Assembly: GCA_024137785.1 (NCBI GenBank)
Contig: JAHRHZ010000108.1
Span: forward strand, 2,758,855-2,822,854
Direction of reading: 5' to 3'
Length of the DNA stretch: 64,000 nt
Source of the DNA: Ginglymostoma cirratum
Taxonomy: Eukaryota
The notes beneath the pieces are model-generated. The model saw only the letters and a program-made list of their open reading frames with translations, did no database searches and was not told where the DNA came from. The translations under genes were made by a program, and so were the position numbers. Shown piece by piece: positions 24,237 to 59,279 of the stretch; position 1 is the stretch's first letter, and the number at the start of each line of letters is the position of its first letter.

Positions 24237-25437
24237 AACTGATCAGGAATGATACTTGTCCTAGTCTAAACACTAGGCAATCAACTCTGTCCATATGTTA
24301 CAGAATAATTCCTGCAAGTTCAACTCAGAAATAGTGAAAAACCTAGTCATCAGCATTTGAACCTGCGCAGAGCAACCCAAACATATTTCTAACTCATTGC
24401 CACGACAACTGGCACCTGACAACAGGCTTTGAATTTGCACTAACATTTTTGGTATAATATTAGTGACTTGTTACATCAGATACAAAGTATAACTCACTGC
24501 ACCTTTCAGTGTCAGCCACCCAGTCTTTTCCTCAGTCACTTGCAATGTCTGCACTCCCCCATTTTTCTGACTGCTAAAAGGCAAGAATACACTGTCGACT
24601 TCTCCATCACTCAAGAAATGCATCAAATTGCATGGTCTCCTGTGGTAGCATTGGAACTCACGCCTCCAACAAGAAACAAGCCTAAATCCAATGCCCTAGA
24701 CTGCAGAGCCATGCTAACTGAGTGACTTGTATTGTCAAAACCCTTGACTGATATTGGCACTGAGTTAGAATGTAAACTATGAACAGGGCCCCATTCCTCA
24801 TGCCTTTAAGATGTTCTTCTTTCACAATGGATTTGATGCACTGTAGGTGACTGTGACATCTCCATCACTTATTGTCCATCCCCAGGTGCCCCTGAGTAGA
24901 TGCTGAGTGGCATTTTCATGTAAATTGATGACTTGTTATTTCTCCTTGTCCAACAGTCCTTCTTAAGGTCGATCTCAGACCTTCCCTGCTGCTTGATTTA
25001 CAAAGTGACTCTTGCCTTTATGATCAGAAGATTTTGCAGATACTCAGCAGCTCAGGAGGTACCTGTTGATACAGGAACAGAGGTAATGTTTGAGCTCAAT
25101 TACCCTCCATCAGAACTGTGGAAAGTGAGAGATCTTAGAGGTTTCAAACAAATTCTCAGAGAGGGAAAGGGGAGAGGAGGAAAGAAGAAAAAAAGCAAGC
25201 TCCTTGATAGGTGGAAGACTGGAGAGATTCAATATCAAAAGGGAAAATCGTGAATGACAGAAGGAGATGAGAATGGAAGAAAAAAATTAACACAGGTTGA
25301 TTGAAATATTCTGGACCAATGAGCTCCCTCTGCTGTGGAGAGAGATAAAAGGTACTGCAGATGCTGGAGAATCTGAGATAACAAGCGTGGGGCTGGATGA
25401 ACACAGCAGGTCAAGCAGCATCATAGGAGCAGGAAAA

Positions 25438-25471
25438 CTTGACATTTCGGGCCTAGACCCTTCATCAGAAA
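25438..25471 (-). ncRNA. Hammerhead ribozyme motif at the 3' terminus of the long PLE
   Basis: Minus strand TTT CTGATGA A GGGTCTAGGCCC GAAA TGTC AAG; same strand as the PLE ORF. Confidence 0.65.
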
Positions 25472-25723
25472 TGGGGGAGGGGAAGAGGGTTCTGAAATAA
25501 ATAGGGAGAAAGGGGGAGGCAGATAGAGGATGTACAGAGGAGAGGATAGGTGGAGAGGAGGCAGACAAGTCAAAGAGGTGGGGATGCAGCCAGTAAAGGT
25601 GAGTGTAGGTAGCGGAGTAGGGAGGAGATAGGTCAGTCCAGGGAGGACGGACAGGTCAAGGGGGCGGGATGATGTTAGTAGACAGGAGATGGGGGTGGGG
25701 CTTGAGGTGGGAGGAGGGGATAG

Positions 25724-25823
25724 NNNNNNNNNNNNNNNNNNNNNNNNNNNNNNNNNNNNNNNNNNNNNNNNNNNNNNNNNNNNNNNNNNNNNNNNNNNNN
25801 NNNNNNNNNNNNNNNNNNNNNNN
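25724..25823. other. Assembly gap (100 N placeholder)
   Basis: Run of N. Confidence 1.
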
Positions 25824-28769
25824 TGCGGTTGGGGGAGGGGAGATTTTGACGCTTGTGAAATCCACATTGATACCATTGAGCTGCAGGGTTCCCAGGCTGA
25901 ATATGATTTGCTGTTCCTGCAGCCTTAGGGTGGCATCACTGTGGCATTGTAGGAGGCCCAGGATGGACATGTCATCTGAGGAATGGGAGGGGGAGTTGAA
26001 ATGGTTCGCGACTGGGAGGTGCAGTTGCTGTTGCGAACTGAGCGCAGGTGTTCTGCAAAGTGGTCCCCAAGCCTCTGCTTGGTTTCCCCAATGTAGAGGA
26101 AGCCACAACGGGTACAGCGGATGCAGTATACCACATTGGCAGATGTGCAGGTGAACATCTGCCTGATGTGGAAAGTCTTCTTGGGGCCTGGGATTGGGGT
26201 GAGGGAGGAGGTGTGGGGGCAGGTGTAGCACTTCCTGCGGTTACAGGGAAAAGTGCCAGGTGTGGTGGGGCTGGAGGGGAGTGTGGAGCGGACAAGGGAG
26301 TCGCGGAGGGAGTGGTCCTTCCAGAAGGCAAATAAGGGTGGGGAGGGAAAAATGTCTTTGGTGGTGGGGTCTGATTGCAGATGGCGGAAGTGTCGGAGGA
26401 TGACGTGTTGGATCCGGAGGTTGGTGGGGTGGTACGTGAGGACGAGGGGGATTCTTTTTTGGTTATTATTGCGGGGATGGGGCATGAGGGATGTGTTACG
26501 GGAAATGTGGGAGACACGGTCGAGGGCGTTCTCGACTACTGTGGGGGGGAAGTTGTGGTCCTTGAAGAATGAGGACATCTGAGATGTACGGGAGTGGAAT
26601 GTCTCATCCTGGGAGCAGATGCGGTGGAGGCGAAGGAATTGGGAATAGGGGATGGCATTTTTGCAGGAAGGTGGGTGGGAGGTGGTGTATTCCAGGTAGC
26701 CGTGGGAGTCAGTGGGCTTGAAATGGACATCGGTTTCTGGGTGGTTACCCGAGATGGAGACAGAGAGGTCCAGAAAGGAGAGAGAAGTGTTGGAGATAGT
26801 CCAGGTGAACTTCAGGTTGGAGTGGAAGGTGTTGGTGAAGTGGATGAACTGTTCGAGCTCCTCATGGGAGCACGCGGTGGCGCCGATGCAGTCATCAATG
26901 TAACGGAAGAAGAGGTGGGGTTTAGGGCCAGTGTAGGTATGGAAGAGGGATTATTCCACATAACCTACAAAGAGGCAGGCATAGCTTGGGCCCATGCGGG
27001 TACCCATGGCCACCCCCTTTGTCTGTAGGAAGTGGAAGGAATTGAAAGAAAAGTTGTTGAGGGTGAGGACGAGTTCGGCTAAGCGAATGAGGGTGTCGGT
27101 GGAGGGGGATTGGTCAGTTCTGCGGGACAGGAAGAAGCGGAGGGCCTTTAGGCCATCTGCATGGGGAATACAGGTGTATAGGGACTGGATGTCCATAGTA
27201 AAAATGAGGTGTTGGGGACCGGGGAATTGGAAGTTCTGGAGGAGGTGGAGGGCGTGGGTAGGTAGGGAGTTCCTGGACCAAGGGGGTGAAAATGGAGTCT
27301 AGGTAGGTGGAGATGAGTTCGGTGGGGCAGGAGCAGGCGGAGACAATGGGTCGACCAGGGCATTCAGGTTTGTGGATTTTGGGAAGGAGTCGACCAGGGC
27401 ATTCAGGTTTGTGGGTTTTGGGAAGGATCGACCAGGGCATTCAGGTTTTTTCCCTCTGCTGTGGGAACGTTTTACTTCCTAGTTCACTCCCAGAACATTT
27501 CTGTTCCACAGTGACAACGCAATCCTTAGCCTCCGTTACTGTGAATAAACATTTCATTGAACAAAACATTACAGTCCACGTAAGCAGAAGGAAAAAAAAC
27601 GAAAATACTTGCTACTTGGATGATGTTCAGGGGTAATTCATTAGTTTATTTTCCGTAGCCTTCTGAACCTGTTCATTATGGTCTGGATCCTTTCTAACGG
27701 GGGTCCAACACCGTTCTTCCCATTCTTATGTCTCCCACTCTATCCTTCAATAATTATTTACTATTATTATGTTTGAAGAACAACTTACAATTTATTTTCG
27801 CACAGCCTGCCATCTTTTCCTTATGCGTCCTCTCAGCTTTCCTTATTTCAGCCTTAGCCTCTCTCCAGTCGGTTTCTCAATGTTAAAATGAAATCTGTAT
27901 TACAAAGCTGTTCTGCCGATATTTTCATAAAGAAGGCGTTCAGGAGTTGCCAAAAAGAACTGAAGGGAAAGGATGTGGCATGTTCTATTCAACAAAACGT
28001 TATAGATCGTCATTTATTATTGTATGTGCACACTTCACGTCTATAAACGTAGATAACACAGTGTGGAGCTGGAAGAACACAGCAGGTCAGGCAGCATCGA
28101 AGGAGCAGGAAAGCTGACGTTTCGGATCGGGACCCTTCTTTAGGAAAGGAAAACGTCTATACGTCTGTAAATGTGTCCTGCTTCAACTTGCATTTATGAG
28201 AGCATTACCCCTCGCCCTCCTATGTCTGGTCTTGACGATTCCGAAATATTCATGGCTTTTGTCTCATCTTTTATGCTCGAAAATCAACGTAATCTAAAAC
28301 TCTTCTTCCAAGGGCACAATCGAAGATTATTTTGGGTTTCCCATTCCCTCTCACCCGCTGCGCTTCCCGCCTAAGAAACACCTCCATGTAAAAAGAAAAT
28401 CCATCTTTTCAAATCATGAAGTGGCCTTGTCCCTCTCTATGTCAGTATTCCATTCCTGTTATACATCTATCCGATGTGTCAATGCTGCAATCAATTAATC
28501 ATTGCACCACCCACTGTGGCCCTTCATTCAGCTGTAAAGCCTCTGGGACCTCTGGGATTCCACCTGTAAATATTATCGTCTGTCCATTTACCTGTCCTCT
28601 TTGTGACCCACCATCTTTATAAATCCAATCAGGTGAAGAAGCATGTTACCACCCGCCATAGCACGCATTTAAATTTCACTCAAGGTTCAGGTTAGAGTAA
28701 CCCGCCCTGTAATAACATATTCTGAAATCGACTGCTATTCCCGGATGTAAAGGTGGAAAAACTACGTTT

Positions 28770-28945: not shown

Positions 28946-28960
28946 ATCGCAAGATATGCG

Positions 28961-29614
28961 AGATAACAAGGTGTGGAGCTGGATGAACACAGCAGACCAA
29001 GCAGCATCATAGGAGCAGAGTCGCGAACCATTTCAACTCCCCCTCCCATTCCTCAGATGATATGTCCACCCTGGGCCTCCTGCAATGCCACAGCGATGCC
29101 ACCCGAAGGCTGCAGGAACATATTCAGCCTGAGAACCCCACAGCCCAATGGTATCAATGTGGATTTCACAAGCTTCAAATTCTCCCCTCCCCAACCACAT
29201 CCCGAAACCAGCCCAGCTCCTCCCCGCCTCCCTAACCTGTTCTTCCTCTCACCTATGCCCTCCTCCTACCTCAAGCCCCACCCCCATCTCCTATCTACTA
29301 ACCTCATCCCGCCCCCTTGACCTGTCCTTCCTCCCTGGACTGACCTATCTACTCCCTACCCCCCACCTACACTCACCTTTACTGGCTCCATCCCCGCCTC
29401 TTTGACCTGTCTGTCTCCTCTATCCATCTTCTATCCGCCTCCCCCCTCTCCCTATTTATTTCAGAACCCTCTTCCCCTCCCCCTTTTCTGATGAAGGGTC
29501 TAGGCTCGAAACGTCAGCCTTCCTGCTCCTCTGATGCTGCTTGGCCTGCTGTGTTCATCCAGCTCTACACCTTGTTATCTCGGATTCTCCAGCATCTGCA
29601 GTACCTATTATCTC
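28961..29614 (+). mobile_element. Short PLE family A copy: inverted 5' arm, GIY-YIG C-terminal remnant and hammerhead terminus
   Basis: 15-bp TSD ATCGCAAGATATGCG (28946-28960) / ATCACAAGATATGCG (29615-29629). Confidence 0.88.
29485..29518 (+). ncRNA. Hammerhead ribozyme motif (family A)
   Basis: TTT CTGATGA A GGGTCTAGGCTC GAAA CGTC AG. Confidence 0.65.
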
Positions 29615-30767: not shown

Positions 30768-30929
30768 GGAAAGCTTGACGTTTCGGGCCTAGACCCTTTA
30801 TCTGAAGAAGGGTCTAGGTCCGAAACGTCAAGCTTTCCTGCTCCTATGATGCTGCTTGGCCTGCTGTGTTCATCCAGCTCTACATCTTGTTATCTCGGAT
30901 TCTCCAGCATCTGCAGTTCCTATTATCTC
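30768..30929 (+). mobile_element. Hairpin mini-PLE family A
   Basis: Inverted arms meet at about 30800; intact CTGAAGA..GAAACGTC core; TSD CAGCAAATT(T)GAACCT. Confidence 0.85.
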
Positions 30930-31913
30930 AGCAAATTTGAACCTGCTCTGCTATTTGATCCAATCAAGGCTGAGCTTATCTCAGCCTCCACTTTTGTACC
31001 GCACCCCATAAACACTTTAACCATTACAAATTAAAAATCTGTCTATCTCCTCCTGAAGTTAACTCAATGTCCTGTCGTCCGTCGCACGCTGGAGTAAGTG
31101 AAGATTCGCGACCCTCTTTGAAAGAAGTAATTGCTCCACAACTCCGCTTTAAATCTCCTACCCTTGTTATAAAGTTTCCATTACAATTTTAATTAGCCCT
31201 CGTTCCCAGTAATGCTGTTGGAACATTGACGTTGCCATTAGTTGGAGGTTGTTGCTCTACACATATCCCCCAAAGCAGTGAGCATTGTGGCACCTGAGCG
31301 TGGATATTGAGAAAAGAGATAGTAGGAACTGCCGATGCTGGAGAATCTGAGATAACAAGGTGTAGAGCTGGATGAACACAGCAGGCCAAGCAGCATCAGA
31401 GGAGCAGGAAAACTGACATTTCGGGTCTGGACCCTTCTTCGGAGGACCCATGTCCTTCGAGACGAAATTTCAGCGATTATCTTGGGCCAGTTTCTACTCG
31501 TCACTTGTTTCATAGCAGTTAGTAGAAGCTACAATGAATTCATTCGCCATTAGTTCCATGCTTGCGGTACTTAATACAGGTAGTTAGCTATTCGGGCTAT
31601 CGATTTTAGACCATTTGTGAAAAGCACCAGATTTCTAAAAAGTGTTTTGTTTGTGACTTTGATTTTCGTTTATTACTGGTCGTGGTCAGAGAATCTCTGC
31701 GAAGCAATGATTTACGAAAGGGACTCGGGCAGAAGGAAGCATTGTAACTTTCGACTGCAACTATAGCACCATTTTTCTTCCGCTGATTGTGGACCCAATA
31801 TGGAGCATCCAACCAGAGGTATAGAATTAAAGATTGTCCTGCTGGGAGCCCTTTAGTGTCCTTCATCCCTTTAGTGCTAGGTGCTTAGAATGGTGTCTTC
31901 AGTTTAATAGTGT

Positions 31914-32535: not shown

Positions 32536-34425
32536 AGTTGCGGCCAATGCAGTTAATTTTATCAGCGACAGGAGCTATTTGTACCCTCCTAAACTGACTT
32601 GTTTGGTCATTGTTACGTGGCGATTAACCCTAAATGTGGTGCTGCAGTCTCTCTGAGAGGAACAGCACTCCATATTCGGTGTGATGTGAGTGGCAGAGGA
32701 TGAAGTCAGTATAACATTGGAAAACATACTGTTTTCCAACTGAATACAGATCCCCATCACACCAACAGCTGTAGGTGACCCACAGGAACGTTTGGCTCGA
32801 CTTTGTATTGGTGGCCAGTGTCAACGTGAAATTAGTTTTCTTATGTTCCATTTTTCACGAAACAGGGAGAGAAAAGGACTTAACTCAAGGGAACGGCTTA
32901 TTTTATAGAATTTCTTTCAAATTAAGTTTGCCCTTTGTCGGTTAAGCGAGTTTCAGGAAATAATCTCCGCTTCGATTAAATGGGTCGTCGAGCTGCGAAG
33001 AAATTTCGACTAAATCAAATTCAGAACAAAGGATTTGTCAGCAGAGATGGATAGCACCCTCAATTCGCATGTGCTGACCCTCAGCGAGTTAACATAGCAC
33101 AACTTCAGGCCAGTCTTCATCCAGGACAGCAGTGAAATCATTATGACAGTGTCTGCTTGTCTCTGTAAGTGACGCCAGTTGAACGCGGCAGTTGACTTAA
33201 TTAACAAATACAGAGATAATAGGTACTGCAGATGCTGGAGAATCCGAGATAACAAGGTGTGGAGCTGGATGAACACAGCAGGCCAAGCAGCATCAGAGGA
33301 GCAGGAGTGGCTACTGTACAACTCAACCACTGATTCTATCCTTCTCACCTGAAAGGGTGAATCCCTCAGAAATTACACCATATATGCTTATTATCACATT
33401 AAGCCCAATCTTCAAGGGGGTTGCTTCAAAAGTACCTGTGCAACTTTAATTTTTAAAGTCCTAAAAGTAAAATCTGGGAAACAAGATTATTTACACAGCT
33501 ACAATGTTTTAGAGAAGTGAATTGTAAGTGCAAAATTCGTCCATACTGTGCGAGGTATTTCTGATGTCAATGCCTTTAACTTGCCAAAAGCTGGTTAGGA
33601 AACCATTAAAGAGTAAGTGTTGAATGTTTTCAACGAGTTGGAGTTTTTTTTTATTCAATCATGTCTCACAAAATAATAGCAGCAATGCGGCAGATCATAA
33701 ATCCGAACTGAACTGTGTTAAAACCCTGTGAATTATACGCTAATCCTAGCTTGCTTCCCATCATATCTGCACCAGAGATTTTACAAATTGAACTTCTTCA
33801 ATGCAATTCTCTATTTAAAATGAGAATAAATGACTTTGAGCCCTATTTACTTGCGAAATACCTCCTAAACAAAGCACTGAGCGGATCCATCTAATAACAT
33901 AACTGATCTATCGTGTCAATCAGATACTTCACGAAAGTCAACACGAGAAATATTATCACTTAGCTCATTTCTTAGTGGTGACCATAACCCAGTACATGCA
34001 ACATGATTGTTTTAGGTTCGAGCATAAAGGCACTCAGAAACAGAGGAAGATTAGCCCTCAGGCCTTCTCCTTCATTTGGTAGAATAGTTGTTGAAATTCA
34101 TTATGAACTACCGTTTACCGTAATAGTAGGAACTGCAGATAGTGAACAACCTGAGATAACAAGGTGTAGAGCTGGATGAACACAGCAGGCCAAGCAACAT
34201 CAGAGGAGCAGGAGAGCTTGAAGTTTCGGGCCTAGACCCTTCAGCACTGTTTCTCTCTTCTGAATTCCAGGGTACTAAATTATCTCTCTCACATTCTTAA
34301 ATCTACTTACTTTCGGTAAATGACTCCAGTGAATCGTTTCTCTGCATTGTGAACATTGCTTTTCGTCCCGGCTGCAAATACGCAATCACTGATGTGTTCT
34401 GTACTAAAACCAACGAATCCAAATC

Positions 34426-34605
34426 GGGCCTGGCAGCATCTGTGAAGAAAAAAAATCAGAGTTAACGTTTCGGGTCCGCTTCTGAGGAAGGGTCACCGGA
34501 CGTTAACTCTGATTTTTCTTCACAGATGCTGCCAGACCTGTTGAGCTTTTCTGGCAACTTCTGTTTTTGTTCCTGATTTACAGTATCGTCAGTTCTTTCG
34601 GTTTT
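34426..34605. mobile_element. Hairpin mini-PLE family B; other copies at 3246-3492, 6697-6847 and 14605-14735
   Basis: Inverted arms GCAGCATCTGTGAAGAAAAAAATCAGAGTTAACG; partial core CTGAGGA AGGGTCACCGGA; TSD AATCCAAATC. The 6697 copy has TSD CATGAAACAC(G/A)AGCT. Confidence 0.75.
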
Positions 34606-35409
34606 AAATCCAAATCATAAAATGGTATCGTTAAATTGTTAAAGCATAGCATATTCCCCGTCAGTTCTATACACTGTTTGTCTATCAGGAACGAGATAAC
34701 TCTGCATGTCTTGTTTTGAACAGGATTCTCAATCTCTTACACCACATTCTAATATTTATGCTGATCTACCCCCAACTTTTCTAACACAATAGTATTACAC
34801 ATTTTATTTATTCCGCCTCTCAGTACATAACAGTAACGGTTAGCAGTCCTCTCCGATAAATGTGCTTTCTCATTCACCAATGTCTATGACTGTCTGAAGC
34901 CTGGCGTGGTCCCCCATCATTAGCACATGCAAACGGTTCCAGAAAAACGGCCTGGAACTATGTTGATATTTTGCCCCATATGCACACCAGGCATGCTCAT
35001 CTACCATTCCAAGTATTTTCACAACGTCAAAAACCTTGCGCTCAACATTTAGAAGCTGGAGGCATTTTATTCCTGCACGGTTTAAGATCACACACAAAGG
35101 GTACTATTCCCACATGGCACAAAATTGTAAACAAATAGCCTTAGCTTCTATATACAGAATCAACGAAAACAATTTAAACAAATTTTACATATTTGAGCTT
35201 CTTCTGCAGGAACGTCGCAAACATTTCTGCTGCAAAGTCATCGACCCTGCAAATCCAACTCCAGACCATGAGCAGCGCTATTCTCTTGGTTTGTGTGAAC
35301 CAACAGCTCAGAAGGATAGGAGCAGATTTCTGCAGATGCTGGAGCCTGTATTGAAAACAAAAATACTGGAGATAACAGGGGGTCAGGCAGCATCCATGGA
35401 AAGAAAGCA

Positions 35410-35447
35410 AGCTAACTTTCGAGACTAGATGATTCTTCATCAGAGCT
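35410..35447 (-). ncRNA. Degenerate hammerhead ribozyme motif (family C)
   Basis: Minus strand AGCT CTGATGA AGAATCATCTAGTCTC GAAA GTT AGCT; AGCU/AGCU stem I, but the C after GAAA is missing. Confidence 0.5.
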
Positions 35448-35603: not shown

Positions 35604-35635
35604 GTCCTGAAGAAGGGTAATACCCGAAACGTTAA
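35604..35635 (+). ncRNA. Hammerhead ribozyme motif (variant stem II)
   Basis: CTGAAGA A GGGT AAT ACCC GAAA CGTT AAC; different stem II with pairing preserved. Confidence 0.6.
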
Positions 35636-36869
35636 CTGCTCCTTTCCTCCAGATGCTGCCTGGCCTGCTGTGTTCTTCCAGACTCCTGTTTATCCAACTT
35701 TAAACTTCGGACTTGAATTCTACCTGGATTTCCCTCAACATTAAATACACCGCCCATGAATCAGCATTTAAAAGAACATCTTGAGCTTTCCTTTTGTGTG
35801 GACTGTCATTCAGAGTAGAATAGAAACTCTTAGCACCTCTAACAATTGTCATCTTGATTACTGATGACAAGATCTCAACTTGACAACGTTCCTAACACTG
35901 TAGTCACAGCCAATAATGTTATAATTTATATTTGATAAACCTCATGAAAGTTGAAGATTAGCCACAACATTCAAAATAAATACGTTTCGTTTAAGAAAAT
36001 GTACTAGGAGTCGGCTTCCTGTGAAGGCTCAACGATGTTTTAAATGATAACAGTTTGTCTTTCTCTACCAAAGCAGAATGGTCAGAAAGTTATTAGTGCA
36101 TCTTGCTTTCCAGGTCAGTGAGAAGCTTTACATCAACATATTGTTTTAGCCCTCGATCCTGACATAGACATTGGATCAATCACCATTAACCTCTGGAATG
36201 TATACGAAAATGCTAGGTTATTTTTGCAATTTTGTTCCCTTTTTCCAAATGCGGATGAGATAACACGGTGTGGAGCTGGATGAACACAGCAGGCCATGCA
36301 GCATCAGAGAAGCCGGAAAGCTGACGTTTCGGGCCGAGACCCTTCTTCAGAAAACAGGCTACTGAGGCACATGATCCGACTATATAACTCTGATTGGGCT
36401 TCTTCTTTTGTTTCCGGTATTATAAACAAGCGAATCAGGGCAGCAGCTCTCCCCTTTTATTGATACTGATTAATTATTCTGTTAACTCTGCGGCAACACT
36501 TCAATTGAATTTGAACAGGGTGTTAATGCGAAAGATGCAATTGGATTTCAAATGGATATTAGTATCTATTGTTCTCGTCAGATTCATGACATGTAAGTAT
36601 TTAAATTAATAGATAATTGAATTAAATTAATAGTTAATTGATAGTCACTGGTAGTTCAAATTTACGCCTTCTTCAGTCCTCCTGCTGGAATAATTATATT
36701 TGTAATGATACTTTTCAATGAGTAAGGAGCGTTGTGTGTCCAGTTCGATGTTATTTCGTTAATTTAAAGAGAACAGCAAGTGTGAAGATGTGGGGAGGAA
36801 ATTCGTGGATCAAGTTAGTGGTTTTTTTTGAAAGTGAACAGATGAAGCTGCAGTCTGGGCAAAAGTGAA

Positions 36870-37302: not shown

Positions 37303-39067
37303 TCGAAAGAGAAACGAAGAAGCCTAAAAGCATAAATTCGCAATAAGAGAGTAGAGTGGCACAAAATGCAATCAAAATAACAAATGAAGCGTGTGTCTTT
37401 ATATCAAGGGGACGGACGTACGTCCAAAGACGGGCAGATTAGGTGGATTCGGCGTGTTAAATTGTCCGCAGTGTCCAGGGATGTGCAAGCAGGGTGGATT
37501 AGCCATGGGAAGTGCGGGATCGCGGGGATAGGGAGGGTCTGAGTTGGACTTTCTTCAGAGGGTCGGTGCAGACTCAGTGGGCCGAATAGCCTCTTTCTGC
37601 ACTGTAGGGATTCTATGAAGTAGTGGACGTCAAACCTTACTTGTGTGGAACCGTTTTGAGCAATATTTTTACTGCCTTGTTGAATTCTGTGCACCACACG
37701 CCAGCAATCCATTTGTTTTACGCACAAGTCGTCAAAACAATAATAGGAATAGAATGTTAATTTATGGGCAGAAAGGCACGCAAAGGATGATGAATTGTGG
37801 ACTCTCTCACTACTAAAGTGCCTTTGATTCGGGAATAACGGGTATGTTATGTACAGCGGTTTAGGATGTGCAGAACAGAAACAGGTAAATCATCTAAAAA
37901 GAGAAATTGCGGAGCAGATTATGTTAAACAGGACCTTCCACTCAAATTTCTTCGGCTATCTTACAGTTACCCTAACTCTTCTGGCCTCCCGCATAATTTG
38001 AAACACCTTCCTTGTATTGATTTTACGAAACTGTACAATGATCAGAAGACATTCCATTGTAAACTCTAAGCCTTCTCCAGAAGAGATACATATGCAGTTC
38101 CACATTTCGGTTCGGTCTAAGCTCAAGTCAAGTGAGATTTCTGAAGCAGGATCCCGACCCGAAACATCAGCTTTCCTGCTCCTCTGATGCTGCCTGGGAT
38201 GCTGTGTTCCTCCAACTCCACACTGTGTTATCTCTGACTCCAGCATCGGCAGTTCTTACTATCTCTGAGTAAAATCAGCAGTGTCTTTCGTTGAAAGCAG
38301 AACTGTTTGCATAGCTGCAACGTTTTACTTCCTCGCTTCAGTACAAGAGCTCTGCTCTTCAGTTACTTTCCAATAGATATACCCGGAGCTCTTTGTTTTG
38401 CTGAGGGTGATCTTGATAAGCTGCGTAGTCACTTTCCACATAACCATAAATTAAGATTCCTTTGTTCTTTGCCCTCTTAAGATTGATATTTTTCAAGGAG
38501 CATGTGATCTCCATATACTTACAAACGAACTTACATCAGTTCATACCGATAAATACTGATAATAATTTGAATTTTTTTTGAAGTCTGGAATTAATGATAA
38601 CCATGAATCCATTGTCGATTATTGGAAAATCCCATCTGGTTCACTAATATCCGTTAGGGAAGGCAACTGGCATCGTTACCTGGTCTGGAATATATGCGAC
38701 TCCAGACTCATAGCAATGTGGTTGACTCTTAAGTGCCCTCTGGTCAATTAAGGATGGGCAACACATGCTGGCCTAATCAGCGACACCCTCAACTTGTGAA
38801 TATTGTTTTTAAATTGCCAATTGTTGGCCCCTTTTATACCATTATTAATTTCTGCATTTTGGCAAAGTTGTAGCTTAGCTAAGAAAAGATACATCTCGGG
38901 ATATTGCAGAGTGGGTGTGAGCTGCAAACCAACTGTGAATGAATTAAATTTGGAGCAGGTCTGAGAAGCTGAAAGTTACAAACACGCTCCTGTATTTCTG
39001 GAATATAAATGGAAAATGACACGAATTTCGTTTTTGCTTTATCCGCCGATCACATTGTATATTCCAG

Positions 39068-39380: not shown

Positions 39381-40308
39381 TCCTCTGCTATGAGTATTCT
39401 GTATTTTGAGTCAAATAACTGACGACGTTAGTCGAACTTTGGACATGGATGATGGAAATCGGGTGATATTCAATAGCCCTCTTTATGTCTGTCCAGACGA
39501 AACGTTATATCGATCCCGAAGCAAATTAAAACCGGGCTATGTCTAGATTGTCGCCAGTTCGTTACTGGATAATCTGTGCGTACGCCAATTATTAGCAGTT
39601 AACTGGTGTCGTTCCCCAGAACCTGCATTCGGGGCCTTAGGGTTTCACTGGATTTTTAAACGATACAGGAAAACTGCTCGAAGCAGGGAAGAGCATTTCA
39701 GCTACATCAAATATGTACTTAGATGTCATGCTGAGCCTTGTATTCTCTCCGGGGACGTTCCTGGGGAAGTTATGCCCTGACTTTGGAAGCATTATTTAGA
39801 CAAGTAAAGCGGCTCGTTTCATGTGAGTTTATACCGACTCGCATGAAACGAGCTTTTGGTTCAGTCCGTTAACCCATGCATTTGCTGAGATTTTTAAATA
39901 GAACATAGAACAGCACAGCACAGAAACGGACCCCCCGGCCCACGATGTTGTGCTAAACATGACGCCAAATTAAACTAAACCCTTCTGCCTGCCCTTGGTC
40001 CATACCCCTCCATACCTTGCATTTTCATGGGCTTATGTAAAAATTCCTTAAACTTCCTATCGCATCTGCCTCCACCACCGCCCCCTGGCAGTGCTTTCCA
40101 GACTCCTACCACTCCCTGTATTAAAACAAAAACTTGTCTCTCACATCTCCTTTTAACTTCCCCCCTTCATCTTAAATGCGTGCCCCTGCTATTAGAATTA
40201 TTATGGGTACCATGCAATGAAGTGGAAGTTTGGATAGGACGCACGCAGAGTCACTGGTTCTCCGACACGGCAATGCAAAACAATGTGTAAGACAATAAGG
40301 TCATTCAG

Positions 40309-53290: not shown

Positions 53291-54581
53291 TTTGTTAAAT
53301 CATCCATTAATGAGGAAACATCTTTCATTGGCCCAGAGATTTTCATTTATTTAATTTTGCATTCTGGCATGTTCTCCTACTGTCACACTCTACAAGCTCT
53401 GTGGTCAACCATTTTGCAAATCACAAAGAAACATTAGTACAATTGCAAAAATATAATGCCTTCATAATTTTTGATATTGAGCAAAGATGTCATTACGATC
53501 ATATCATCAATCAGCAAACGACTTTCACAGTTCTGCTGCGCATTGTACGGAATTCATCAGGCTTGGAAAGGTAATCAGCATGGAACATTTAGAAATTCTG
53601 TCTGACACATCAGATGAACTTCAGTGGATTGTTCAGTTTCACAAGTAGTTTAAATTAATTAATTGTTATGTCCCTGATTAAACCAGATATGTGGGAATTT
53701 AAATAAAAGATTAACTGATTGGCTCGATCAACACAGTGCTTTAAGTGTCTTCAGTCCATCTATTTTAAAGATGTACAGTTATGGCTTCCAACAACATGAG
53801 TCCCTCTTTAGGATGCAACTGGTTATGTGCTCGCAGTTAGATTCTAAATTAAACCTTCATGGAAAATACTGCTGGTAATATAGAAAATGCCTTAAGTACC
53901 CATGACTTCAGAAATATGCAAAGATTACAAGCTTGAGGAAGGCAGTATCTAGAGGACAGTAGAACATTTTCTTCATTTAAAAATATGAAAATGTATTATT
54001 TATTTTAATGTACGTGACTGAATATCTCTATGTAACAATGGGAAGTATATTGCTCACGTTTGTTCAGTGCCATGATCATAAATTTAGACCTTAGTAAAGT
54101 CGTGAAATACCCGGCAGAAACACATTTTCATTTGTTGCACATTTTTTTATTATTCTTCACTACAACCTGGTGAACAAGGAAATTAATTTACAACAACAAA
54201 ACAAACCCGACACTAAATAATCTTAATTTAATCAACATGAATGCGTTTCCACAATGGGATTCTGTTCTGATTATCACAGTCCGTTCAAAATCTCCAAAGT
54301 TCAGGAGAAGTTTGCAGAATATCAAAAATTAGTTTTGAGATCGAGACATTTCCTACTGAGCTGAACTCAGATTGTTGAAATAACCCTCCTTAATGATTCT
54401 GTGAATTACTTTGAATTATTAAGTTTATTAAAGTCAATAACACATGTTCAATGTGAAAATATTTTTCATTCTCATGAATTCTTACTCTCTGGCTCCACTC
54501 TTGTTCTGAAAATTAAGTTACAATGAATCTTTAACATTTGACTTGATAGATTGTACAGATCCATAAGCTGGGAACAAGACT

Positions 54582-54705
54582 ATTTCAGAACCCTCTGCCC
54601 CTCCCCCATTTCTGATGAAGGGTCTAGGCCCGAAACGTCAAGCTTTCCTGCTCCTATGATGCTGCTTGGCCTGCTGTGTTCATCCAGCCCCACGCCTTGT
54701 TATCT
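54582..54705 (+). mobile_element. Solo PLE family A terminus
   Basis: TSD AACAAGACT (54573-54581 / 54707-54715). Confidence 0.85.
54609..54642 (+). ncRNA. Minimal type I hammerhead ribozyme motif (PLE family A), best-conserved copy
   Basis: UUU-CUGAUGA-A-GGGU(CUAG)GCCC-GAAA-CGUC^AAG: core boxes, stem II, palindromic ACGU stem III and short stem I. Predicted cut after 54639. Confidence 0.75.
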
Positions 54706-55840
54706 TAACAAGACTGTCGTACTGTTTGTGTCTGCGCTATTGCCGTCAGTGTTGTCAGGACTTTGACATCAGGAACCTGCCTGAATGGCTGTAAACCTTT
54801 CATTTCTGTCTCCTGCATCTCAGCGACTTTATTTGTCATTGCACAAACACTTTTACCTGACGGGCAGCACGGTGGCTCAGTGGTTAGCACTGCTGCCTCA
54901 CAGCACCAGGGACCCGGGTTTGATTCCAGCCTCAGGCAACAGTCTGTATGGAGCTTGCACATACTCCCCATGACTGCGTGGGTTCCTTCTGGGTGCTCCG
55001 GTCTCCACACTGTGGGGACTCTATGATCATTCTATAAATGACCTTTGACCAAGTGCAAATCTGACCAAAAATGAGATCCCTGGTCAAATTGTAACAATAA
55101 TCTGCAGGAGTTTTGATTAGTTGTTAGAAGTAATAAATCTACCTTGGGGTTGCTTGATTAAGCAAGACAGAATTGTGTATTTAATCTGTGACCTGGCATG
55201 TTTAGTGGCACAATGTAGAAACCTAAGCTACACTTGCTATTTGAAAACCTATTGCAGACTCTTAATATTACTGACAAGGGGCAACGTATACCTCAAATGT
55301 ATTCATGCATTTCAACCATAGCAGGCCATTTAGCGTAGAGCAATTAGAAAGGGAGTTCCACTCGTGTGATCCAGTGGCCCCAAATTTACAGTAACATAGC
55401 TCCCAGTTGGGCTGGTTTATGTCCAGGGGTGAAACGTTACAGTGATCATGCTTCCCGTGCAAATTCTATCCTTGTCCTCCTAGGTGGTAGAGTTTTTATA
55501 TTTCGAAGGCATCAAAGAAATCTTGAGTAATTGTTGAAATGTAACTTTCATAGCGCAGAATTTGCACGGGAGCATTGGTGTTGCAAGGGATTGATGAATA
55601 ATATAGCCGAATGTGCATCAAACAGATGGGCTGAATTATGCTAGATAGTATCGAGCTCATTCTCTTCAGGGGTCTTGTGGTGCAGCGGTAGCCTAAAGTG
55701 TCACACACTGACAGGAACGTAGGAGCATAAACAAAGGAGTCAGGTATTCAGCCTGAGTCACTTAGTCTATAATGGACATTTATCTTGGGACAGCAGCTGG
55801 GAGACAGGAGGGACACAGTGACCGATACATTTACAAATCT

Positions 55841-56737
55841 AGGAGCAAATTACTGCAGATACTGGAATCTGTCCTGAAAACAAAACTTCTGTAAGTCACT
55901 GGCAGTCAGGCAGCATCTGAGGAGAGAGAGCAAGCTAACATTTCCAGTCTCGATGACTCTACATCAGACTTTTTGGCAAACTCCTTGCCAGACATCAGCA
56001 GTGAAATGGAAAGCAAGGTGAAAGAGGCAATTGGAATTGCTGTCAGATGGAAAAGCAAAACTTCTTCAGGGTGGGCATTCCTCGATTAGTCAGTCGATTA
56101 AACACAATGTCGGAGCAAACTACTGCAGATGGTGGAACCCGAACTGAAAAAAAAACCCGCTGGAAATCACAGAGGGTCAGGCAGCATCCGTGAAGAGAGA
56201 TGAAGCTAATGTTTCAGGTACAGATGGCTCTTCATTGGCCCCAAGACTGCTCCCCATAGCCGGTCATTTTAAAGCAGCATCCTGCTCATGTGCCCACTTG
56301 TCTGTCCTCGGCATGCCGCAATGCTCCAACGAATCACAGCACCAACAGGAGGAAGAACATCTCATCTTCAAACTGGGCACTTTACTACCTTCCTGACTTA
56401 ATATTGAATTCAACATCTTCAAATTGTGAACTCATTCCCATTTCTTCCCTTCCTTTCAGTTTCATTTGTTACATTCGCTGTCACCATGTCCTCTGTCTCC
56501 TCCCTCCACTTTAGTGGGACCATCTATTCTTTCCATCTTAACAGTTAGACATGCCATTGTTCTGCCACTCTCACTGTTTTATCAGCACCCTTTCTCCACC
56601 AGCACTCCAACCCCGCATGATCGCACAAATATGCTTCATGTCAGCTCTGACAGAGCATCATCTAGACTCAAAACAGTAGTTTACTCTGTCTCCACGGATG
56701 CTGCTTAACCCGCTGTAATTTTCAGCATTTCTTGTCT
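55841..56737. mobile_element. PLE family C copies (55841-55970; 56113-56737 with GIY-YIG C-terminal remnant); another at 35318-35480
   Basis: HLIFKLGTLLP*LNIEF GIY-YIG tail; degenerate CTGA..GAGTC..GACTC..AAA cores; inverted termini. Confidence 0.7.
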
Positions 56738-56739
56738 TA

Positions 56740-57152
56740 AAGCCTATAAATCTAGTGCAGTGCGGATTTGGGCCTAGTCATTACAGGGTTCTTGGTTTTC
56801 AGCAGCAGCTGCTGGGAGGTGGAGAGGGACGCAGTACGTAGTAAGCCCGTAAATATGGGTAGGTATGGATTCGGGCCTAGGCTTTACTGGGTTCTTAACT
56901 TGGGGCAGCAATAGCAGCTGGGAGGCAGGAAGGGACGCAGTAACTGGTAAGCCTATAAATCCAGCGTGGTAGGGATTTAGGCCTAGCCTTGATAGGGCAC
57001 TTTTCTCAGTGCAGCAGCAGCTGAGAGGCAGGGAGGAACACAGCAAATGGGAAGCCTGTAAGTCTAGCACGGGATGGATTCGGGCCTAGTTTTACAGGTC
57101 ACTTATCTTGGAACAGCCAGAGGTGGGAAGGGAAATAGTGACTGGTAAGCCC
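56740..57152 (+). repeat. Degenerate tandem repeat, about 95-106 bp x4, directly 5' of the CR1 remnant
   Basis: Units start at AAGCC (56740, 56843, 56949, 57052, 57147) and share GGATT.GGGCCTAG and CAGCTG(G)GAGG. A further partial unit lies at about 55750-55842. Confidence 0.8.
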
Positions 57153-57154
57153 TG

Positions 57155-59110
57155 TGATGTGGCAAAGGTTAGTGGGAAACTAGAGGATTGGGAAATCTTT
57201 AAAGGTCAATAGAAAGCCATGAGTGAAGTTATAAAGAGAGGTAAGATGGTTTATGAGAGTAAACTAGCTCAGAATATAAAAACAGATAGAAAAGGTTTCC
57301 ACAGATATAAAAAACAAAAAAGAAAAAGTGGCTAAGGTAAACTTTGGTCCTTTGCAGGATGAGAGGGGGATTTAATAATGGGAAATGAGGAAATTGCTGA
57401 GGCATTGAACGGGTAGCGTCTGTCGGTCTTCACAGCAGAACACACAAATAATATGTCAAAAGTTGATGATAAGGAGGATACGGCTGGTGAGGACCTCGAA
57501 ATGATCATTACCACTAAAGAGTAATGTTAGGTAAGCTAATGGGGCTGAAGGTAGAAAAGCCTCCTGGTCCTGATTGATTGCATCGCAGGGTATTAAACAA
57601 GATGGCAGGGGAAATAGCAAATGCGCTTGTGGTAATTTACCAAACTTCACTGGTCTCTGGGGCGGTTCCGGCAGATTGGAAAACATCGAATGTGATGCCA
57701 CTGTTTAAAAAAAAGAGGTAGACAAAAGGCGGGTAACTCTAGGCCCGTTAGGTCAACTTCTGCAGAGGGCAAAATGCGTGACTCTATAATAAAGGAAGAA
57801 ATAGCGAGACATCTGCATAGATGCAGATCTATCATGCAGACCCACCATGGGATCATGAAAGGCAGGTCACATTTAACTAATTTGCTGGAATCCTTTGAGG
57901 ACATTCCAGGCACAGTGGGCTACAGGGAACCGGTGGATTTGGATTTCCAGAAGGCATTCGACAAAGTGCCACACAAAAGGCTGCTGCATTAGATAAAAGT
58001 GCACGGCATTGCCAGTAATGTATCAACATGGGTAGAAGATTGGATAACTAACAGAGCACAAAAAGTAGGGACAAATAATTGTTTTTTGGTTGGCGATCAG
58101 TGGCTAGTAGTGTGCTGCAGCTATCTACAATTTACATAGGTGATGTGGAGTTGGGGACCAAGCGTGGCGTGTCAAAGTTTGCAGATGACACTAAAATGAG
58201 TGGTCGAGCAAAGTGTGCAGAGGTCACTGAAAGCCTACAGAGGGATACAGATAGGTTAATTGAGTGGGCAAAGGTCTGCCAGGTGGAGTATAATGTTGGT
58301 AAATGTGAGGTCATCCATTTTGGTAGGAATAACAGCAAAATGGACTATTATTTAAATGGTGAAAAATTGCAGCATGCTGCTCTGCAGAGGGACTTGAGTG
58401 TCCTCATACATGAATCACAAAAAGTTGGCTTGCAGATGCAGCAGGATATTAAGAAGGAAAATGAAACATTGTCCTTCATTGCTAGAGGGATGGAGTTTAA
58501 AAATAGGAAGGTTATGTTGCAGCTGCATAGGGTGCTGGTGAGGCCAAACCTGGAGTACCGCGGGGATAATAGGAACTGCAGATGCTGGAGAATCCGAGAT
58601 AACAAGGTGTGGAGCTGCATGAACACAGCAGGCCAAGCAGCATCATAGGAGCAGGAAAGCTTGACGTTTCAGGCCTGGACCCTTCATCAGAAATTTTCAG
58701 GCCCGACACGTCAAGCTTTCCTGCTCCTCTGATGCTGCTTGGCCTGCTGTGTTCATCCAGCTCCACACCTTGTTATCCTGGAGTACTGCGGACAGTTTTG
58801 GTCTTTTTATTTGAGAAAGGATGTAATGACACTAGGGACGTTGCAGAAGAGGTTTACTAGATTGATTTCAGAGCTGAGAGGATTGGCTTGTGAGGAAGGA
58901 TTGAGTAAACTGAGACTATGCACATTAGAATTTAGAAGAATGAGGGGGGATTTTATAGAAATGTATAAAATTATGAAGACAATAGACAAGATAGAAACCA
59001 GTGAAGCAGTTGAGGCTACCTCATTAAATATTTTTAAGGCATAGGTCGAGTTTTGAACAGTAAAGGAATTAAAGGTTATGGTGAATAGGCAGGTAAGTGG
59101 ATCATAGTTT
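57155..59110 (+). mobile_element. CR1-clade LINE ORF2 remnant (RT)
   Basis: SHLTNLL, LDFQKAFDKVPH, KFADDTK, RPNLEYC and RRMRGD motifs, with frameshifts. Confidence 0.9.
58564..58776 (-). mobile_element. Hairpin mini-PLE family A inserted in a CR1 RT remnant
   Basis: Long inverted arms; 15-bp TSD CCTGGAGTACCGCGG / CCTGGAGTACTGCGG interrupts the CR1 RPNLEYC frame. Confidence 0.9.
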
Positions 59111-59279
59111 ACAAGAGCAAGGAGGTAATGCTGGAGATAACACAATGTGGAGCTGGAGGAACACAGCAAGCCAGGCAGCATCAGAGGAGCAGGAAAGCTA
59201 ACGTTTCGGGTCGGGACCCTTCAAGGGGATAACTGTGTTATATCTGACTCCAACATCGGCAGTTCTTTCTATCTCTGAG

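What the first reader, a model, noticed from the sequence alone, without database searches (positions are those of the whole stretch)
25341..59276. Dense population of hammerhead-ribozyme-bearing Penelope mini-elements from at least three families
Seen: more than 20 short copies, mostly 90-650 bp, derive from PLE termini. Many contain CUGA(U/A/G)GA-A-[stem II]-GAAA-CGU(C/U). Stem II differs between families but keeps its pairing: GGGU/GCCC (family A, 54620), GGGU/ACCC (35615), GGGUC/GACCC (family B, reconstructed from the two arms at 34426-34605 and 3246-3492) and GAGUC/GACUC (family C, reconstructed from 35410, 55941 and 56643). The motif is on the sense strand of the long PLE at 25341-27447. 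Established: PLE termini are known to carry minimal type I hammerheads with a palindromic stem III that cleave best as dimers. Inference: in this shark lineage the ribozyme-bearing terminus itself has been amplified as SINE/retrozyme-like non-autonomous units, at roughly one copy per 3 kb here. I know of no description of this for chondrichthyans.
Basis: partly seen in the sequence, partly recalled or inferred. Interest (0 to 1): 0.85.

Follow-up and report, generated by a model that had tools for sequence, protein, structure and literature searches.

The report
Penelope retrotransposon debris carrying minimal hammerheads
This stretch of an elasmobranch genome is littered with about 30 short, separately inserted end-pieces of Penelope-like retrotransposons, and some of them still carry the minimal hammerhead ribozyme motif known for this element class, so it is a real but largely ordinary finding.

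Summary
The window has about 22 fragments of one repeat family (A). It also has 4 inverted pairs of a second family (B) and 4 copies of a third (C). Seven copies carry an intact CUGANGA-A-stem II-GAAA-NGUH motif, against none in 200 simulated sequences.

The 2.1-kb copy at 25342-27450 is a 5'-truncated Penelope-like element (PLE) on the minus strand. It has reverse transcriptase (RT) YIDD, a CX4CX2C linker and GIY-YIG in one frame, with the motif downstream on the same strand.

The copies show the published PLE hallmarks:
- separate target-site duplications (TSDs) of 9-15 bp;
- inverted 5' fragments;
- two discrete 3' ends 33 nt apart (the "tail");
- a minimal type I hammerhead (HHR) with a bulged base after A9 and a palindromic ACGU in place of helix III.

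I read them as the PLE's own very short insertions, not as a SINE or retrozyme. There is no tRNA-like head and no tandem unit in the window. Half the cores are mutated. Stem II covariation is weak.

Three things go beyond routine:
- 5' ends cluster 0-7 nt upstream of the motif;
- a 24-nt array and one family-B junction start at the predicted cut site;
- rare 95-98-nt tandem joints appear in public contigs.

Two first-reader notes from other pieces of this genome describe the same elements. This is a new member of a known kind.

The parts
25342..27450 (-). Long 5'-truncated Penelope-like element: RT C-terminal part, CX4CX2C linker, GIY-YIG endonuclease, about 450 nt of CT-rich pLTR, hammerhead motif at 25441-25468 (GAAAUGUC, a CpG decay), and a long 3' end. 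It contains the assembly gap 25724-25823.
   Evidence: One reading frame is nearly open, with 3 stops in 545 codons, and shows YIDD and GIY-YIG motifs. Homologues are elasmobranch and invertebrate GIY-YIG proteins down to E 2e-88. Pfam GIY-YIG scores E 0.007, below its cutoff. A 14-bp TSD CCACAGCAGAGGGA flanks it.
28961..29614 (+). A 596-nt 5'-truncated copy (29019-29614, used as reference R) preceded by a 58-nt inverted 3' fragment (28961-29018). Intact motif at 29488-29515. Long 3' end.
   Evidence: TSD CAAGATATGCG.
54581..54705 (+). A 125-nt copy with an intact motif at 54612-54639 (predicted cut after C54639). Short 3' end.
   Evidence: TSD AACAAGACT.
30768..30929 (+). Mini unit with a 29-nt inverted arm. 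Intact motif at 30802-30829. Long 3' end.
   Evidence: Flanking repeat AGCAAAT(T)TGAACCT read.
36257..36354 (-). Mini unit of 98 nt with an intact motif at 36323-36350. Short 3' end.
58565..58782 (-). Inverted dimer. The sense arm is 58565-58693, with an intact core at 58663-58690 (G10.1-U11.1). The inverted arm is 58699-58782.
   Evidence: TSD GTACTCCAGG.
35607..35694 (+). Divergent variant A' with an intact motif at 35607-35633. Stem II is GGGU/ACCC with loop AAU. H17 is U. Helix I has 4 bp.
28051..28152 (-). Mini unit with a dead core (CUAAAGA). Short 3' end.
   Evidence: TSD TATAGACGT.
31316..31445 (-). Mini unit with a mutated core (CCGAAGA, GAAAUGUC). Long 3' end.
34123..34250 (-). Mini unit with a 3-nt deletion in the CUGAUGA box.
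38138..38265 (+). Mini unit with a dead core (CUGAAGC, GAAACAUC). Long 3' end.
40308..40582 (-). One insertion made of three parts: an inverted arm (40530-40582), five 24-nt repeats (40408-40527), and a body (40308-40407). Each repeat and the body start at the base just after the predicted cut site.
   Evidence: TSD (C)TGAATGACCTT. Also noted as s1-879720.
41495..41633 (+). Inverted dimer. The sense arm 41538-41633 has a dead core. Short 3' end.
33213..33306 (-). A 94-nt 3' fragment without the motif. Long 3' end.
59134..59223 (-). Copy truncated inside the CUGAUGA box, with an inverted tail piece just upstream.
63672..63757 (-). Decayed 3' fragment of family A.
1..115 (+). Family-A 3' part cut off by the window edge.
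3246..3492 (.). Family-B inverted pair. The minus-strand arm holds a decayed motif (3314-3345) with both strands of stem II, GGGUC/GACCC.
6697..6852 (.). Family-B inverted pair. The sense arm starts at 6777/6778, which is within 1 nt of the family-B predicted cut site.
14605..14777 (.). Family-B inverted pair with a decayed motif at 14703-14732 on the minus strand.
34427..34605 (.). Family-B inverted pair. Neither arm has a complete motif.
35317..35443 (-). Family-C copy with a decayed motif at 35414-35443.
55840..55967 (-). Family-C copy with a decayed motif at 55937-55967 (A9 changed to U).
56106..56235 (-). Family-C copy, strongly decayed.
56641..56741 (+). Family-C copy with a decayed motif at 56647-56677.

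Best explanation
These are ordinary insertion products of endonuclease-bearing Penelope-like retrotransposons in an elasmobranch genome. Because of the CX4CX2C linker, I take them to be Neptune- or Nematis-like.

**Layout.** The element carries the minimal type I hammerhead known for PLEs, about 95 nt (short end) or 127 nt (long end) upstream of its 3' terminus. Every insertion that reaches back that far therefore carries the motif.

**Mechanism (inferred by analogy with the Anolis element).** The PLE reverse transcriptase starts at one of two fixed internal sites 33 nt apart, which gives the short end and the long end with its 'tail'. It copies towards the 5' end of the RNA. It usually stops early or jumps template, which gives very short copies, inverted 5' arms and small tandems.

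**5' end (inferred).** Many copies stop 0-7 nt upstream of the motif. I read this as a discrete 5' end of the template RNA, either a transcription start at the end of the pLTR or a strong stop. If so, the 95-130-nt mini units are by-products of reverse transcription that begins at the 5'-proximal copy of the start site.

**Role of the hammerhead (inferred).** It is thought to cut element RNA out of tandem or read-through transcripts, working as a dimer and probably with protein help. The 24-nt array and one family-B junction, both starting at the predicted cut site, fit cleavage in vivo but do not prove it.

**Shown versus inferred.**
- Shown: PLE identity, motif anatomy, TSDs, the two 3' ends and the 5' clustering.
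- Inferred: the transcription-start or strong-stop origin of the mini units, and catalytic activity.
For: **PLE identity.**
- RT, linker and GIY-YIG lie in one frame on the same strand as the motif.
- Homologues are GIY-YIG proteins of rays, sharks, sea cucumber, coral and sturgeon.

**Independent insertions.** TSDs of 9-14 bp flank 6 of 15 units, against 0.75% of random pairs reaching 9 bp. One further TSD was read by eye.

**PLE hallmarks.**
- Inverted 5' arms occur at 28961, 30768, 40530, 41495 and 58699, and in all four family-B loci.
- There are two 3' ends, both ending in TTATCTC, 33 nt apart.
- These match the 30-40-bp tail and the two RT start sites described in PMC8557442 and PMC11167929.

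**Public contigs of three coded organisms.**
- Junctions to unrelated sequence occur at 29579-29581 (5496 / 905 / 206 contigs) and at 29614 (1608 contigs in X1, 161 in X16).
- Summed depth rises towards the 3' end.

**Motif anatomy matches the published PLE min-HHR (PMC4209133).** It has an unpaired base after A9, G10.1-C11.1, palindromic 15.2-16.2 and no helix III.

**5' clustering.**
- 10 of 16 family-A units end at R463-474.
- Tandem joints 29581->29484/29487 occur in 46 contigs of X1, 2 of X6 and 1 of X16.

**Cut-site footprints.**
Against: - Helix I is only 2-4 weak pairs in family A, with duplex energy about +1 kcal/mol.
- Rfam hammerhead models do not match.
- Stem II covariation in the window is weak: 0.388 against 0.332 in shuffles, reached by 30 of 500 shuffles.
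- Between families the motif is only slightly more conserved than the spacer (0.70 against 0.64).
- Half of the copies have a mutated core, so most are dead.
- N7 differs between mini and long copies (A in 6 of 7 against U in 3 of 3). A single common source does not predict this.
- No RNA data could be read, so expression, the transcription start and cleavage are all untested.
- Two cut-site footprints among about 30 5' ends are not significant on their own.
Confidence: 0.8

Rival explanations
1. The 95-130-nt unit is a non-autonomous element in its own right, SINE-like or a very small retrozyme. It has its own master copies and is mobilised in trans by PLE reverse transcriptase. Tandem copies are cut by the hammerhead to unit length and perhaps circularised.
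For: - 5' ends are discrete at R463-474.
- Head-to-tail joints of 95-98 nt occur in public contigs: 46 in X1, 2 in X6 and 1 in X16.
- N7 is A in 6 of 7 mini copies and U in 3 of 3 long copies (Fisher p about 0.03).
- Copy density is very high here, and the element is very abundant in contigs of three organisms.
- Retrozymes are reported to derive from PLE pLTRs, and one chondrichthyan was positive (10.64898/2026.07.22.740005).
Against: - There is no tandem unit in the 64-kb window.
- There is no tRNA-like head.
- The motif is the minimal PLE type, without the loop-loop contacts used to define animal retrozymes (PMC7229834).
- Mini copies occur in both sub-lineages that also have long copies: AAG/CTAT and AG/CTCT.
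- Tandem joints are about 0.02% of the contigs laid. Template jumping can also produce them.
- The summed-depth gradient suggests many copies lack the 5' half of the motif. The tool warns that this is no copy number.
Confidence: 0.17
2. The conserved CUGANGA...GAAACGU block is not a working ribozyme in these elements. It is kept because it lies in the RNA segment that the PLE protein binds, or in the 5' leader just before the conserved ATG box. The hammerhead look would then be an inherited relic.
For: - Helix I is nearly absent in family A.
- Min-HHRs of animal PLEs cleave poorly in vitro (PMC4209133).
- In the Anolis element, cleavage needs the protein and is not required for insertion, and no RNA-seq reads begin or end at the cut site (PMC11167929).
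- Naiad PLEs proliferate without hammerheads (PMC8557442).
- The most conserved block between families is the GATGCTGCC box, not the motif (0.81 against 0.70).
Against: - The full set of core bases, the bulged base, G10.1-C11.1 and the palindromic ACGU are kept in three diverged families.
- One stem II pair changes G-C to A-U between families.
- Two insertion junctions start at the predicted cut site.
Confidence: 0.25

Closest known systems
Minimal type I hammerheads of Penelope-like elements (Cervera and de la Pena 2014, PMC4209133)
   Same: - CUGANGA and GAAA boxes.
- An unpaired base between A9 and 10.1.
- A G10.1-C11.1 pair.
- No helix III, but a palindromic 15.2-16.2 (ACGU) that allows a dimer.
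- Location near the element end on the sense strand.
- Thousands of dispersed single motifs, taken there as truncated PLEs.
- Several sequence families per genome.
   Different: - Stem II here is short (4-5 bp against 6-8).
- Helix I in family A is only 2-4 weak pairs, closer to the 2-bp helix I of the Drosophila virilis variant.
- The host is an elasmobranch, a group that paper does not mention.
Poseidon element PAc of Anolis carolinensis (Frangieh et al. 2024, PMC11167929)
   Same: - The hammerhead lies close to the start of the unit that is repeated at the 3' end.
- Reverse transcription starts at two adjacent internal sites roughly 100-120 nt downstream, giving an optional 30-40-nt tail.
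- Here the two 3' ends lie 94 and 127 nt from C3.
   Different: - In PAc the ORF starts at stem II. Here a conserved ATG-containing box lies about 19 nt after the predicted cut, and whether it is the start codon is untested.
- The linker motif suggests a different clade (Neptune- or Nematis-like).
- There is no biochemical data for this element.
Animal non-LTR retrozymes (Cervera and de la Pena 2020, PMC7229834; Li et al. 2026 preprint, 10.64898/2026.07.22.740005)
   Same: - Non-coding, hammerhead-bearing and related to PLE pLTRs.
- Co-occur with PLEs.
- Monomeric dispersed copies are known.
- One chondrichthyan was reported positive.
   Different: - Retrozymes are defined by head-to-tail tandem units of about 150-450 bp with canonical hammerheads, and they give circular RNAs.
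- Here the copies in the window are dispersed monomers of 95-130 bp with minimal motifs.
- Tandem joints were seen only rarely in public contigs.
Hepatitis-delta-like ribozymes at the 5' end of R2 and other non-LTR retrotransposons (cited in PMC4209133 and PMC6155905)
   Same: A self-cleaving RNA lies just upstream of the coding part. It would free the element RNA from an upstream co-transcript and set its 5' end.
   Different: The ribozyme class and the retrotransposon class both differ. The role here is inferred only.

Membership tests
Penelope-like element (EN+) | [quoted passage not shown] | tested here: met
   One frame of 25824-27460 (minus strand) shows GVAMGTRMGPSY, FFRYIDDCIG and VVYCIRC..FLYIGET. 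Homologues carry PF01541 and PF26215. The Pfam hit on the window ORF itself is below cutoff: E 0.007, with none at E<=0.01 on the longer piece.
Penelope-like element (EN+) | Heavy 5' truncation, an inverted 5' copy next to the insertion, and an optional 30-40-bp tail | tested here: met
   The two 3' ends lie 33 nt apart. Inverted arms are present at five family-A loci and all four family-B loci.
Penelope-like element (EN+) | Partial tandem arrangement forming a pLTR at both ends of a full-length copy | not testable with these tools
   There is no full-length copy in the window. The longest copy is 5'-truncated inside the RT.
Neptune/Nematis clade of PLEs | A Zn-finger-like CX2-5CxxC motif in the RT-EN linker | tested here: met
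   PCNRRKCYTCPH lies upstream of GIY-YIG. The criterion comes from PMC8557442. No phylogeny was made, so the clade call remains an inference.
PLE minimal type I hammerhead | Core boxes CUGANGA and GAAA, with H17 after U16.1 | tested here: met
   Seven copies meet it. The other copies are mutated.
PLE minimal type I hammerhead | An unpaired base between A9 and 10.1, a G10.1-C11.1 pair, and palindromic 15.2-16.2 without helix III | tested here: met
   All seven copies have the bulged A. G-C closes stem II in 13 of 16 aligned copies. ACGU follows GAA.
PLE minimal type I hammerhead | Helix I of about 4-5 bp | tested here: inconclusive
   Family A has 2-4 weak pairs (UUU/AAG). A' has 4 bp, C has AGCU/AGCU (4 bp) and B has 2 bp. 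The D. virilis PLE variant with a 2-bp helix I is accepted in PMC4209133.
PLE minimal type I hammerhead | Stem II supported by covariation | tested here: inconclusive
   89% of cells are paired and register 0 is the best of the slid controls. Only 3 cells have a change on both sides, and 30 of 500 shuffles reach the observed score.
PLE minimal type I hammerhead | Self-cleavage at H17 | not testable with these tools
   Only indirect evidence exists: the 24-nt array and the family-B junction that start at position 1.1.
Rfam Hammerhead families | A match to a curated covariance model | tested here: not met
   There is no hammerhead match at gathering score or at E<=10.
Animal non-LTR retrozyme | Head-to-tail tandem units, each with a hammerhead | tested here: not met
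   No tandem unit occurs in the window. Elsewhere, 95-98-nt go-back joints appear in 46 contigs of X1, 2 of X6 and 1 of X16.
Animal non-LTR retrozyme | A canonical type I hammerhead with loop 1-loop 2 contacts | tested here: not met
   The motif is minimal, with a 4-bp stem II and almost no helix I.
Animal non-LTR retrozyme | Unit-length circular RNA | not testable with these tools
   No run on record as RNA held the stretch. The only matching raw-read run laid nothing.
SINE | A Pol III-type head (tRNA-, 7SL- or 5S-derived) at the 5' end | tested here: not met
   ARAGORN finds no tRNA-like sequence. Rfam finds no tRNA, 7SL or 5S match. The unit starts with the hammerhead motif.

The most novel reading that the evidence does not exclude
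The 95-130-nt stretch from the hammerhead to the RT start site may be a discrete, self-sufficient retrotransposition unit of shark PLEs. On this reading its 5' end is set at the first base of helix I. It would be present in very large numbers in several elasmobranchs and sometimes tandemly repeated. The insertion junctions that start exactly at the predicted cut site (the 24-nt array at 40408-40527 and the family-B junction at 6777/6778) would be genomic footprints of hammerhead cleavage in vivo. For PLE min-HHRs that has not been shown: the Anolis study found no RNA-seq reads beginning or ending at the cut site.
Probability: 0.25. Interest if true: 0.55.

Novelty: new member of a known kind. 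Interest (0 to 1): 0.3.

Why it matters
It adds elasmobranchs to the hosts in which PLE minimal hammerheads are documented at the sequence level. It also shows the tail and two-start-site architecture, worked out in vitro for an Anolis element, in a different PLE lineage.

The useful lead is practical. Shark genomes appear to hold a very large natural library of insertion junctions for one PLE group. A genome-wide histogram of 5' ends could test two things without any bench work. One is whether PLE hammerheads cut in vivo, which would give a peak at position 1.1. The other is where PLE transcripts start, which would give a peak at the motif's 5' edge.

For annotation, these fragments should be masked as PLE, not reported as new SINEs, miRNA-like hairpins or retrozymes.

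Tried and rejected
- **Rfam.** Scans at gathering score and at E<=10 gave no hammerhead. The only hits were weak miRNA-like matches, which are simply the inverted dimers.
- **Pfam.** Scans of ORF pieces of the long copy gave only a sub-threshold GIY-YIG hit.
- **Folding.** Whole units are no more stable than shuffles, with z from -1.8 to +1.5. I make no thermodynamic claim.
- **Box pairing.** GATGCTG (the box after the spacer) pairs with CAGCATC in the tail. The pairing appears in some minimum-energy folds, but both boxes are invariant, so it cannot be tested by covariation. I left it as a side note.
- **ORF start at the AUG inside CUGAUGA.** The frame stays open to the 3' end only in the single-A sub-lineage, and N7 is A in most mini copies. 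I did not pursue it.
- **SINE head.** No tRNA was found.
- **Raw reads.** X23 laid nothing. All informative runs were Logan contigs, so starts, ends, strand and expression could not be read.
- **Paper search.** The first search timed out.

Full report

Yes. The strict pattern CTGANGA..GAAACG occurs six times in the window against 0.07 expected from shuffles. I also wrote a descriptor in the style of the published min-HHR search. It requires CUGANGA, an optional bulged base, a stem II of at least 4 bp closed by G and C/U, GAAA, a paired 15.2/16.2, U16.1 and H17. It finds seven sites: 25468-, 29488+, 30802+, 35607+, 36350-, 54612+ and 58690-. It finds none in 200 Markov simulations of the window.

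Self-comparison of the window shows about 22 fragments of one family, A. It also shows four inverted pairs of a second family, B, and four copies of a third, C. Rfam finds no hammerhead at its gathering scores or at E<=10. Its only weak hits are miRNA-like hairpins, and these are the inverted dimers of the repeat.

**2. The long copy and the gap.**

The long copy lies on the minus strand. One frame of 25824-27460 is nearly open, with 3 stops in 545 codons. It shows RT motifs including FFRYIDDCIG, a CX4CX2C linker and a GIY-YIG block. The 217-residue ORF at 25928-26578 has homologues down to E 2e-88. The named ones come from rays and sharks (Hypanus sabinus, Chiloscyllium punctatum, Leucoraja erinacea), and from sea cucumber, coral and sturgeon proteins labelled GIY-YIG. 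This supports a cartilaginous-fish host. Pfam on the window ORF itself gives only a sub-threshold GIY-YIG hit.

The motif at 25441-25468 is on the same strand, about 450 nt downstream of the ORF stop.

The assembly gap 25724-25823 lies in that non-coding stretch, so frame is not an issue. The copy at 29019-29614 aligns collinearly to both sides of the gap. A 14-bp TSD brackets 25342-27450. The two sides therefore belong to one insertion.

**3. Anatomy of the copies.**

I used 29019-29614 as reference R. In R coordinates, C3 is R470, the predicted cut follows R497, the short 3' end is at R563 and the long 3' end is at R596.

- **3' ends.** All copies share one of the two 3' ends. Both end in TTATCTC and lie 33 nt apart.
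- **TSDs.** Six of 15 units have flanking direct repeats of 9-14 bp, where only 0.75% of random pairs reach 9 bp. A seventh repeat (30768-30929) is visible by eye. These are therefore separate insertion events.
- **Inverted arms.** Five family-A loci and all four family-B loci carry an inverted 5' arm.

High 5' truncation, an inverted 5' copy and an optional 30-40-bp tail are the textbook structure of PLE insertions (PMC8557442). The two 3' ends match the two adjacent internal RT start sites shown in vitro for the Anolis element, where the hammerhead also lies about 100-120 nt upstream of them (PMC11167929).

**4. The motif.**

The seven intact copies read CUGA(U/A)GA, a bulged A, a 4-bp stem II (GGGU with GCCC, ACCC, GUCC, GCUC or GCCU), GAAA, then CGUC or CGUU. 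One copy reads UGUC. There is no helix III, and ACGU is palindromic. This is the published signature of PLE min-HHRs: the unpaired base after A9, G10.1-C11.1 and a palindromic 15.2-16.2 (PMC4209133).

- **Helix I is weak.** Family A has 2-4 pairs of the UUU/AAG kind, with duplex energy near +1 kcal/mol. Variant A' at 35607 has 4 bp and family C has AGCU/AGCU. The D. virilis PLE variant also has a 2-bp helix I (PMC4209133).
- **Many cores are dead.** Half of the family-A copies that span the motif are mutated or truncated. This is what neutral decay of dead copies gives.
- **Families B and C.** Neither has an intact motif in the window. The B stem GGGUC/GACCC is present within one single copy (3314-3345, minus strand). 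The C stem is a majority reading of four decayed copies.

**5. Covariation and conservation.**

On 16 aligned motifs, 89% of stem II cells pair, and register 0 beats all slid controls. Only 3 cells change on both sides, chiefly G-C to A-U at the second pair in family C. Thirty of 500 shuffles reach the observed covariation score. Between families, identity is 0.70 for the motif, 0.64 for the spacer after the cut, 0.81 for a GATGCTGCC box and 0.60 for the next 40 nt.

The case for a hammerhead rests mainly on the exact match to the published PLE signature and its position in the element.

**6. Public reads.**

One call laid Logan contigs of three coded organisms on 28900-29700. The element is very abundant in all three, with 249,632, 84,301 and 15,384 contigs laid at 80% likeness or more.

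- **Depth.** Summed word depth in X1 is about 1-6 million over the pLTR part. It is 4.7 and 10.8 million over the two motif bins, 34 million over 29521-29574 and 14 million over the tail. The shape is the same in the other two runs. The tool warns that this is not a copy number, and other families sharing the box may add to it. The shape suggests 3'-anchored copies, many of which would lack the 5' half of the motif.
- **3' junctions.** Junctions to unrelated sequence pile up just past the short end (29579-29581) and at the long end (29614). This confirms two discrete termini.
- **Tandem joints.** Joints from 29581 back to 29484 or 29487 occur in 46 contigs of X1, 2 of X6 and 1 of X16. Head-to-tail copies of the 95-98-nt unit therefore exist somewhere in these genomes, but rarely.
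- **What could not be read.** No run on record as RNA held the stretch, and the raw-read run tried laid nothing. Expression, strand and RNA ends remain unknown.

**7. What goes beyond routine.**

- **5' clustering.** Ten of 16 family-A units end at R463-474, that is 0-7 nt upstream of C3. If 5' ends were spread evenly over the last 134 nt, the chance of this is below 1e-6 by a rough binomial estimate. The tandem joints in the contigs point to the same positions. Family-C copies also begin 5-6 nt upstream of C3.
- **Cut-site footprints.** The insertion at 40308-40582 has one TSD. It holds five 24-nt repeats plus the body, and each starts at the base right after the predicted cut (also noted as s1-879720). 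The family-B sense arm at 6777/6778 starts within 1 nt of its predicted cut. Two such ends among about 30 are not significant alone, and the array may have grown by slippage after one event. They fit a template RNA whose 5' end was made by the hammerhead.
- **N7 difference.** N7 is A in 6 of 7 mini copies and U in all 3 long copies.

**8. Explanation.**

I conclude with about 0.8 confidence that this is PLE insertion debris. The hammerhead rides along because it lies 95-127 nt from the RT start site. I propose, as inference, that the mini units arise when reverse transcription begins at the 5'-proximal copy of the start site on a transcript that begins just upstream of the motif. Template jumps would give the inverted arms and small tandems.

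- **Rival 1.** A separate non-autonomous, retrozyme-like lineage keeps about 0.17. The discrete ends, the tandem joints and N7 speak for it. The lack of tandems here, the minimal motif type and mini copies in both sub-lineages speak against it.
- **Rival 2.** The motif may be a non-catalytic relic kept for protein binding. This is not exclusive of the main reading and gets about 0.25. Its main support is the weak helix I and the published low activity of animal PLE min-HHRs.

**9. Novelty.**

The following are already published:
- dispersed single min-HHRs as truncated PLEs, with several families per genome showing compensatory changes (PMC4209133);
- the tail and internal RT initiation (PMC11167929);
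- retrozymes as PLE derivatives, including one chondrichthyan (10.64898/2026.07.22.740005);
- PLEs in shark genomes (PMC4350176, PMC8455134).

The elasmobranch families described here are a new member of a known kind.

Two first-reader notes from other pieces of this genome describe the same fold-back, hammerhead-bearing elements (s1-879332, s1-879755). The population is therefore genome-wide, not special to this window.

Noticed in passing
window 29533-29539 with 29591-29597, and the same boxes in the other long-ended copies of families A, B and C: The box GATGCTG, about 47 nt after C3, is the exact reverse complement of CAGCATC in the 33-nt tail. Both boxes are conserved across families A, B and C. 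The pair would enclose the short 3' end in a loop, which recalls the stem-loop where the Anolis PLE starts reverse transcription. Both boxes are invariant, so covariation cannot test it. Fold z-scores are unremarkable.
   Followed up: partly
window 29491-29614 (+): In the single-A sub-lineage, the AUG formed by A6-U7-G8 of the hammerhead core opens a frame that stays open to the long 3' end, about 41 codons. In the AAG sub-lineage it stops after 14 codons, but the ATG inside the GATGCTGC box is then open to the end. Where the PLE ORF starts could not be tested without a full-length copy.
   Followed up: partly
window 25483-25500 (-) and 29451-29468 (+): About 23 nt upstream of C3, the pLTR has a pyrimidine tract ending in TATTTATTTCAG. 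This looks like a 3' splice acceptor. Drosophila virilis Penelope has an intron ending next to helix I.
   Followed up: no
window 34424-34541, 41495-41633, 58565-58782, 6697-6852: The inverted dimers of the repeat form near-perfect hairpins of 70-150 nt. They give weak Rfam miRNA-family hits (E 0.001-0.2, far below gathering scores). If transcribed, they could be sources of small RNAs, and automated miRNA annotation could mislabel them.
   Followed up: partly
window 27300-27460 (-): The 5' end of the long PLE copy has an internal duplication of about 16 codons (twice ...[11 protein letters not shown]...) just inside the TSD. This is another template-jump-like feature.
   Followed up: no
window 28900-29700, public contigs: The majority letters differ between the three coded organisms at several pLTR positions upstream of the motif (29445, 29470, 29473, 29477, 29484). 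Within the motif the only listed difference is 29506, which is private to this copy. Downstream to the short end, only 29519 and 29582 are listed. 66 further differences were not shown by the tool.
   Followed up: partly
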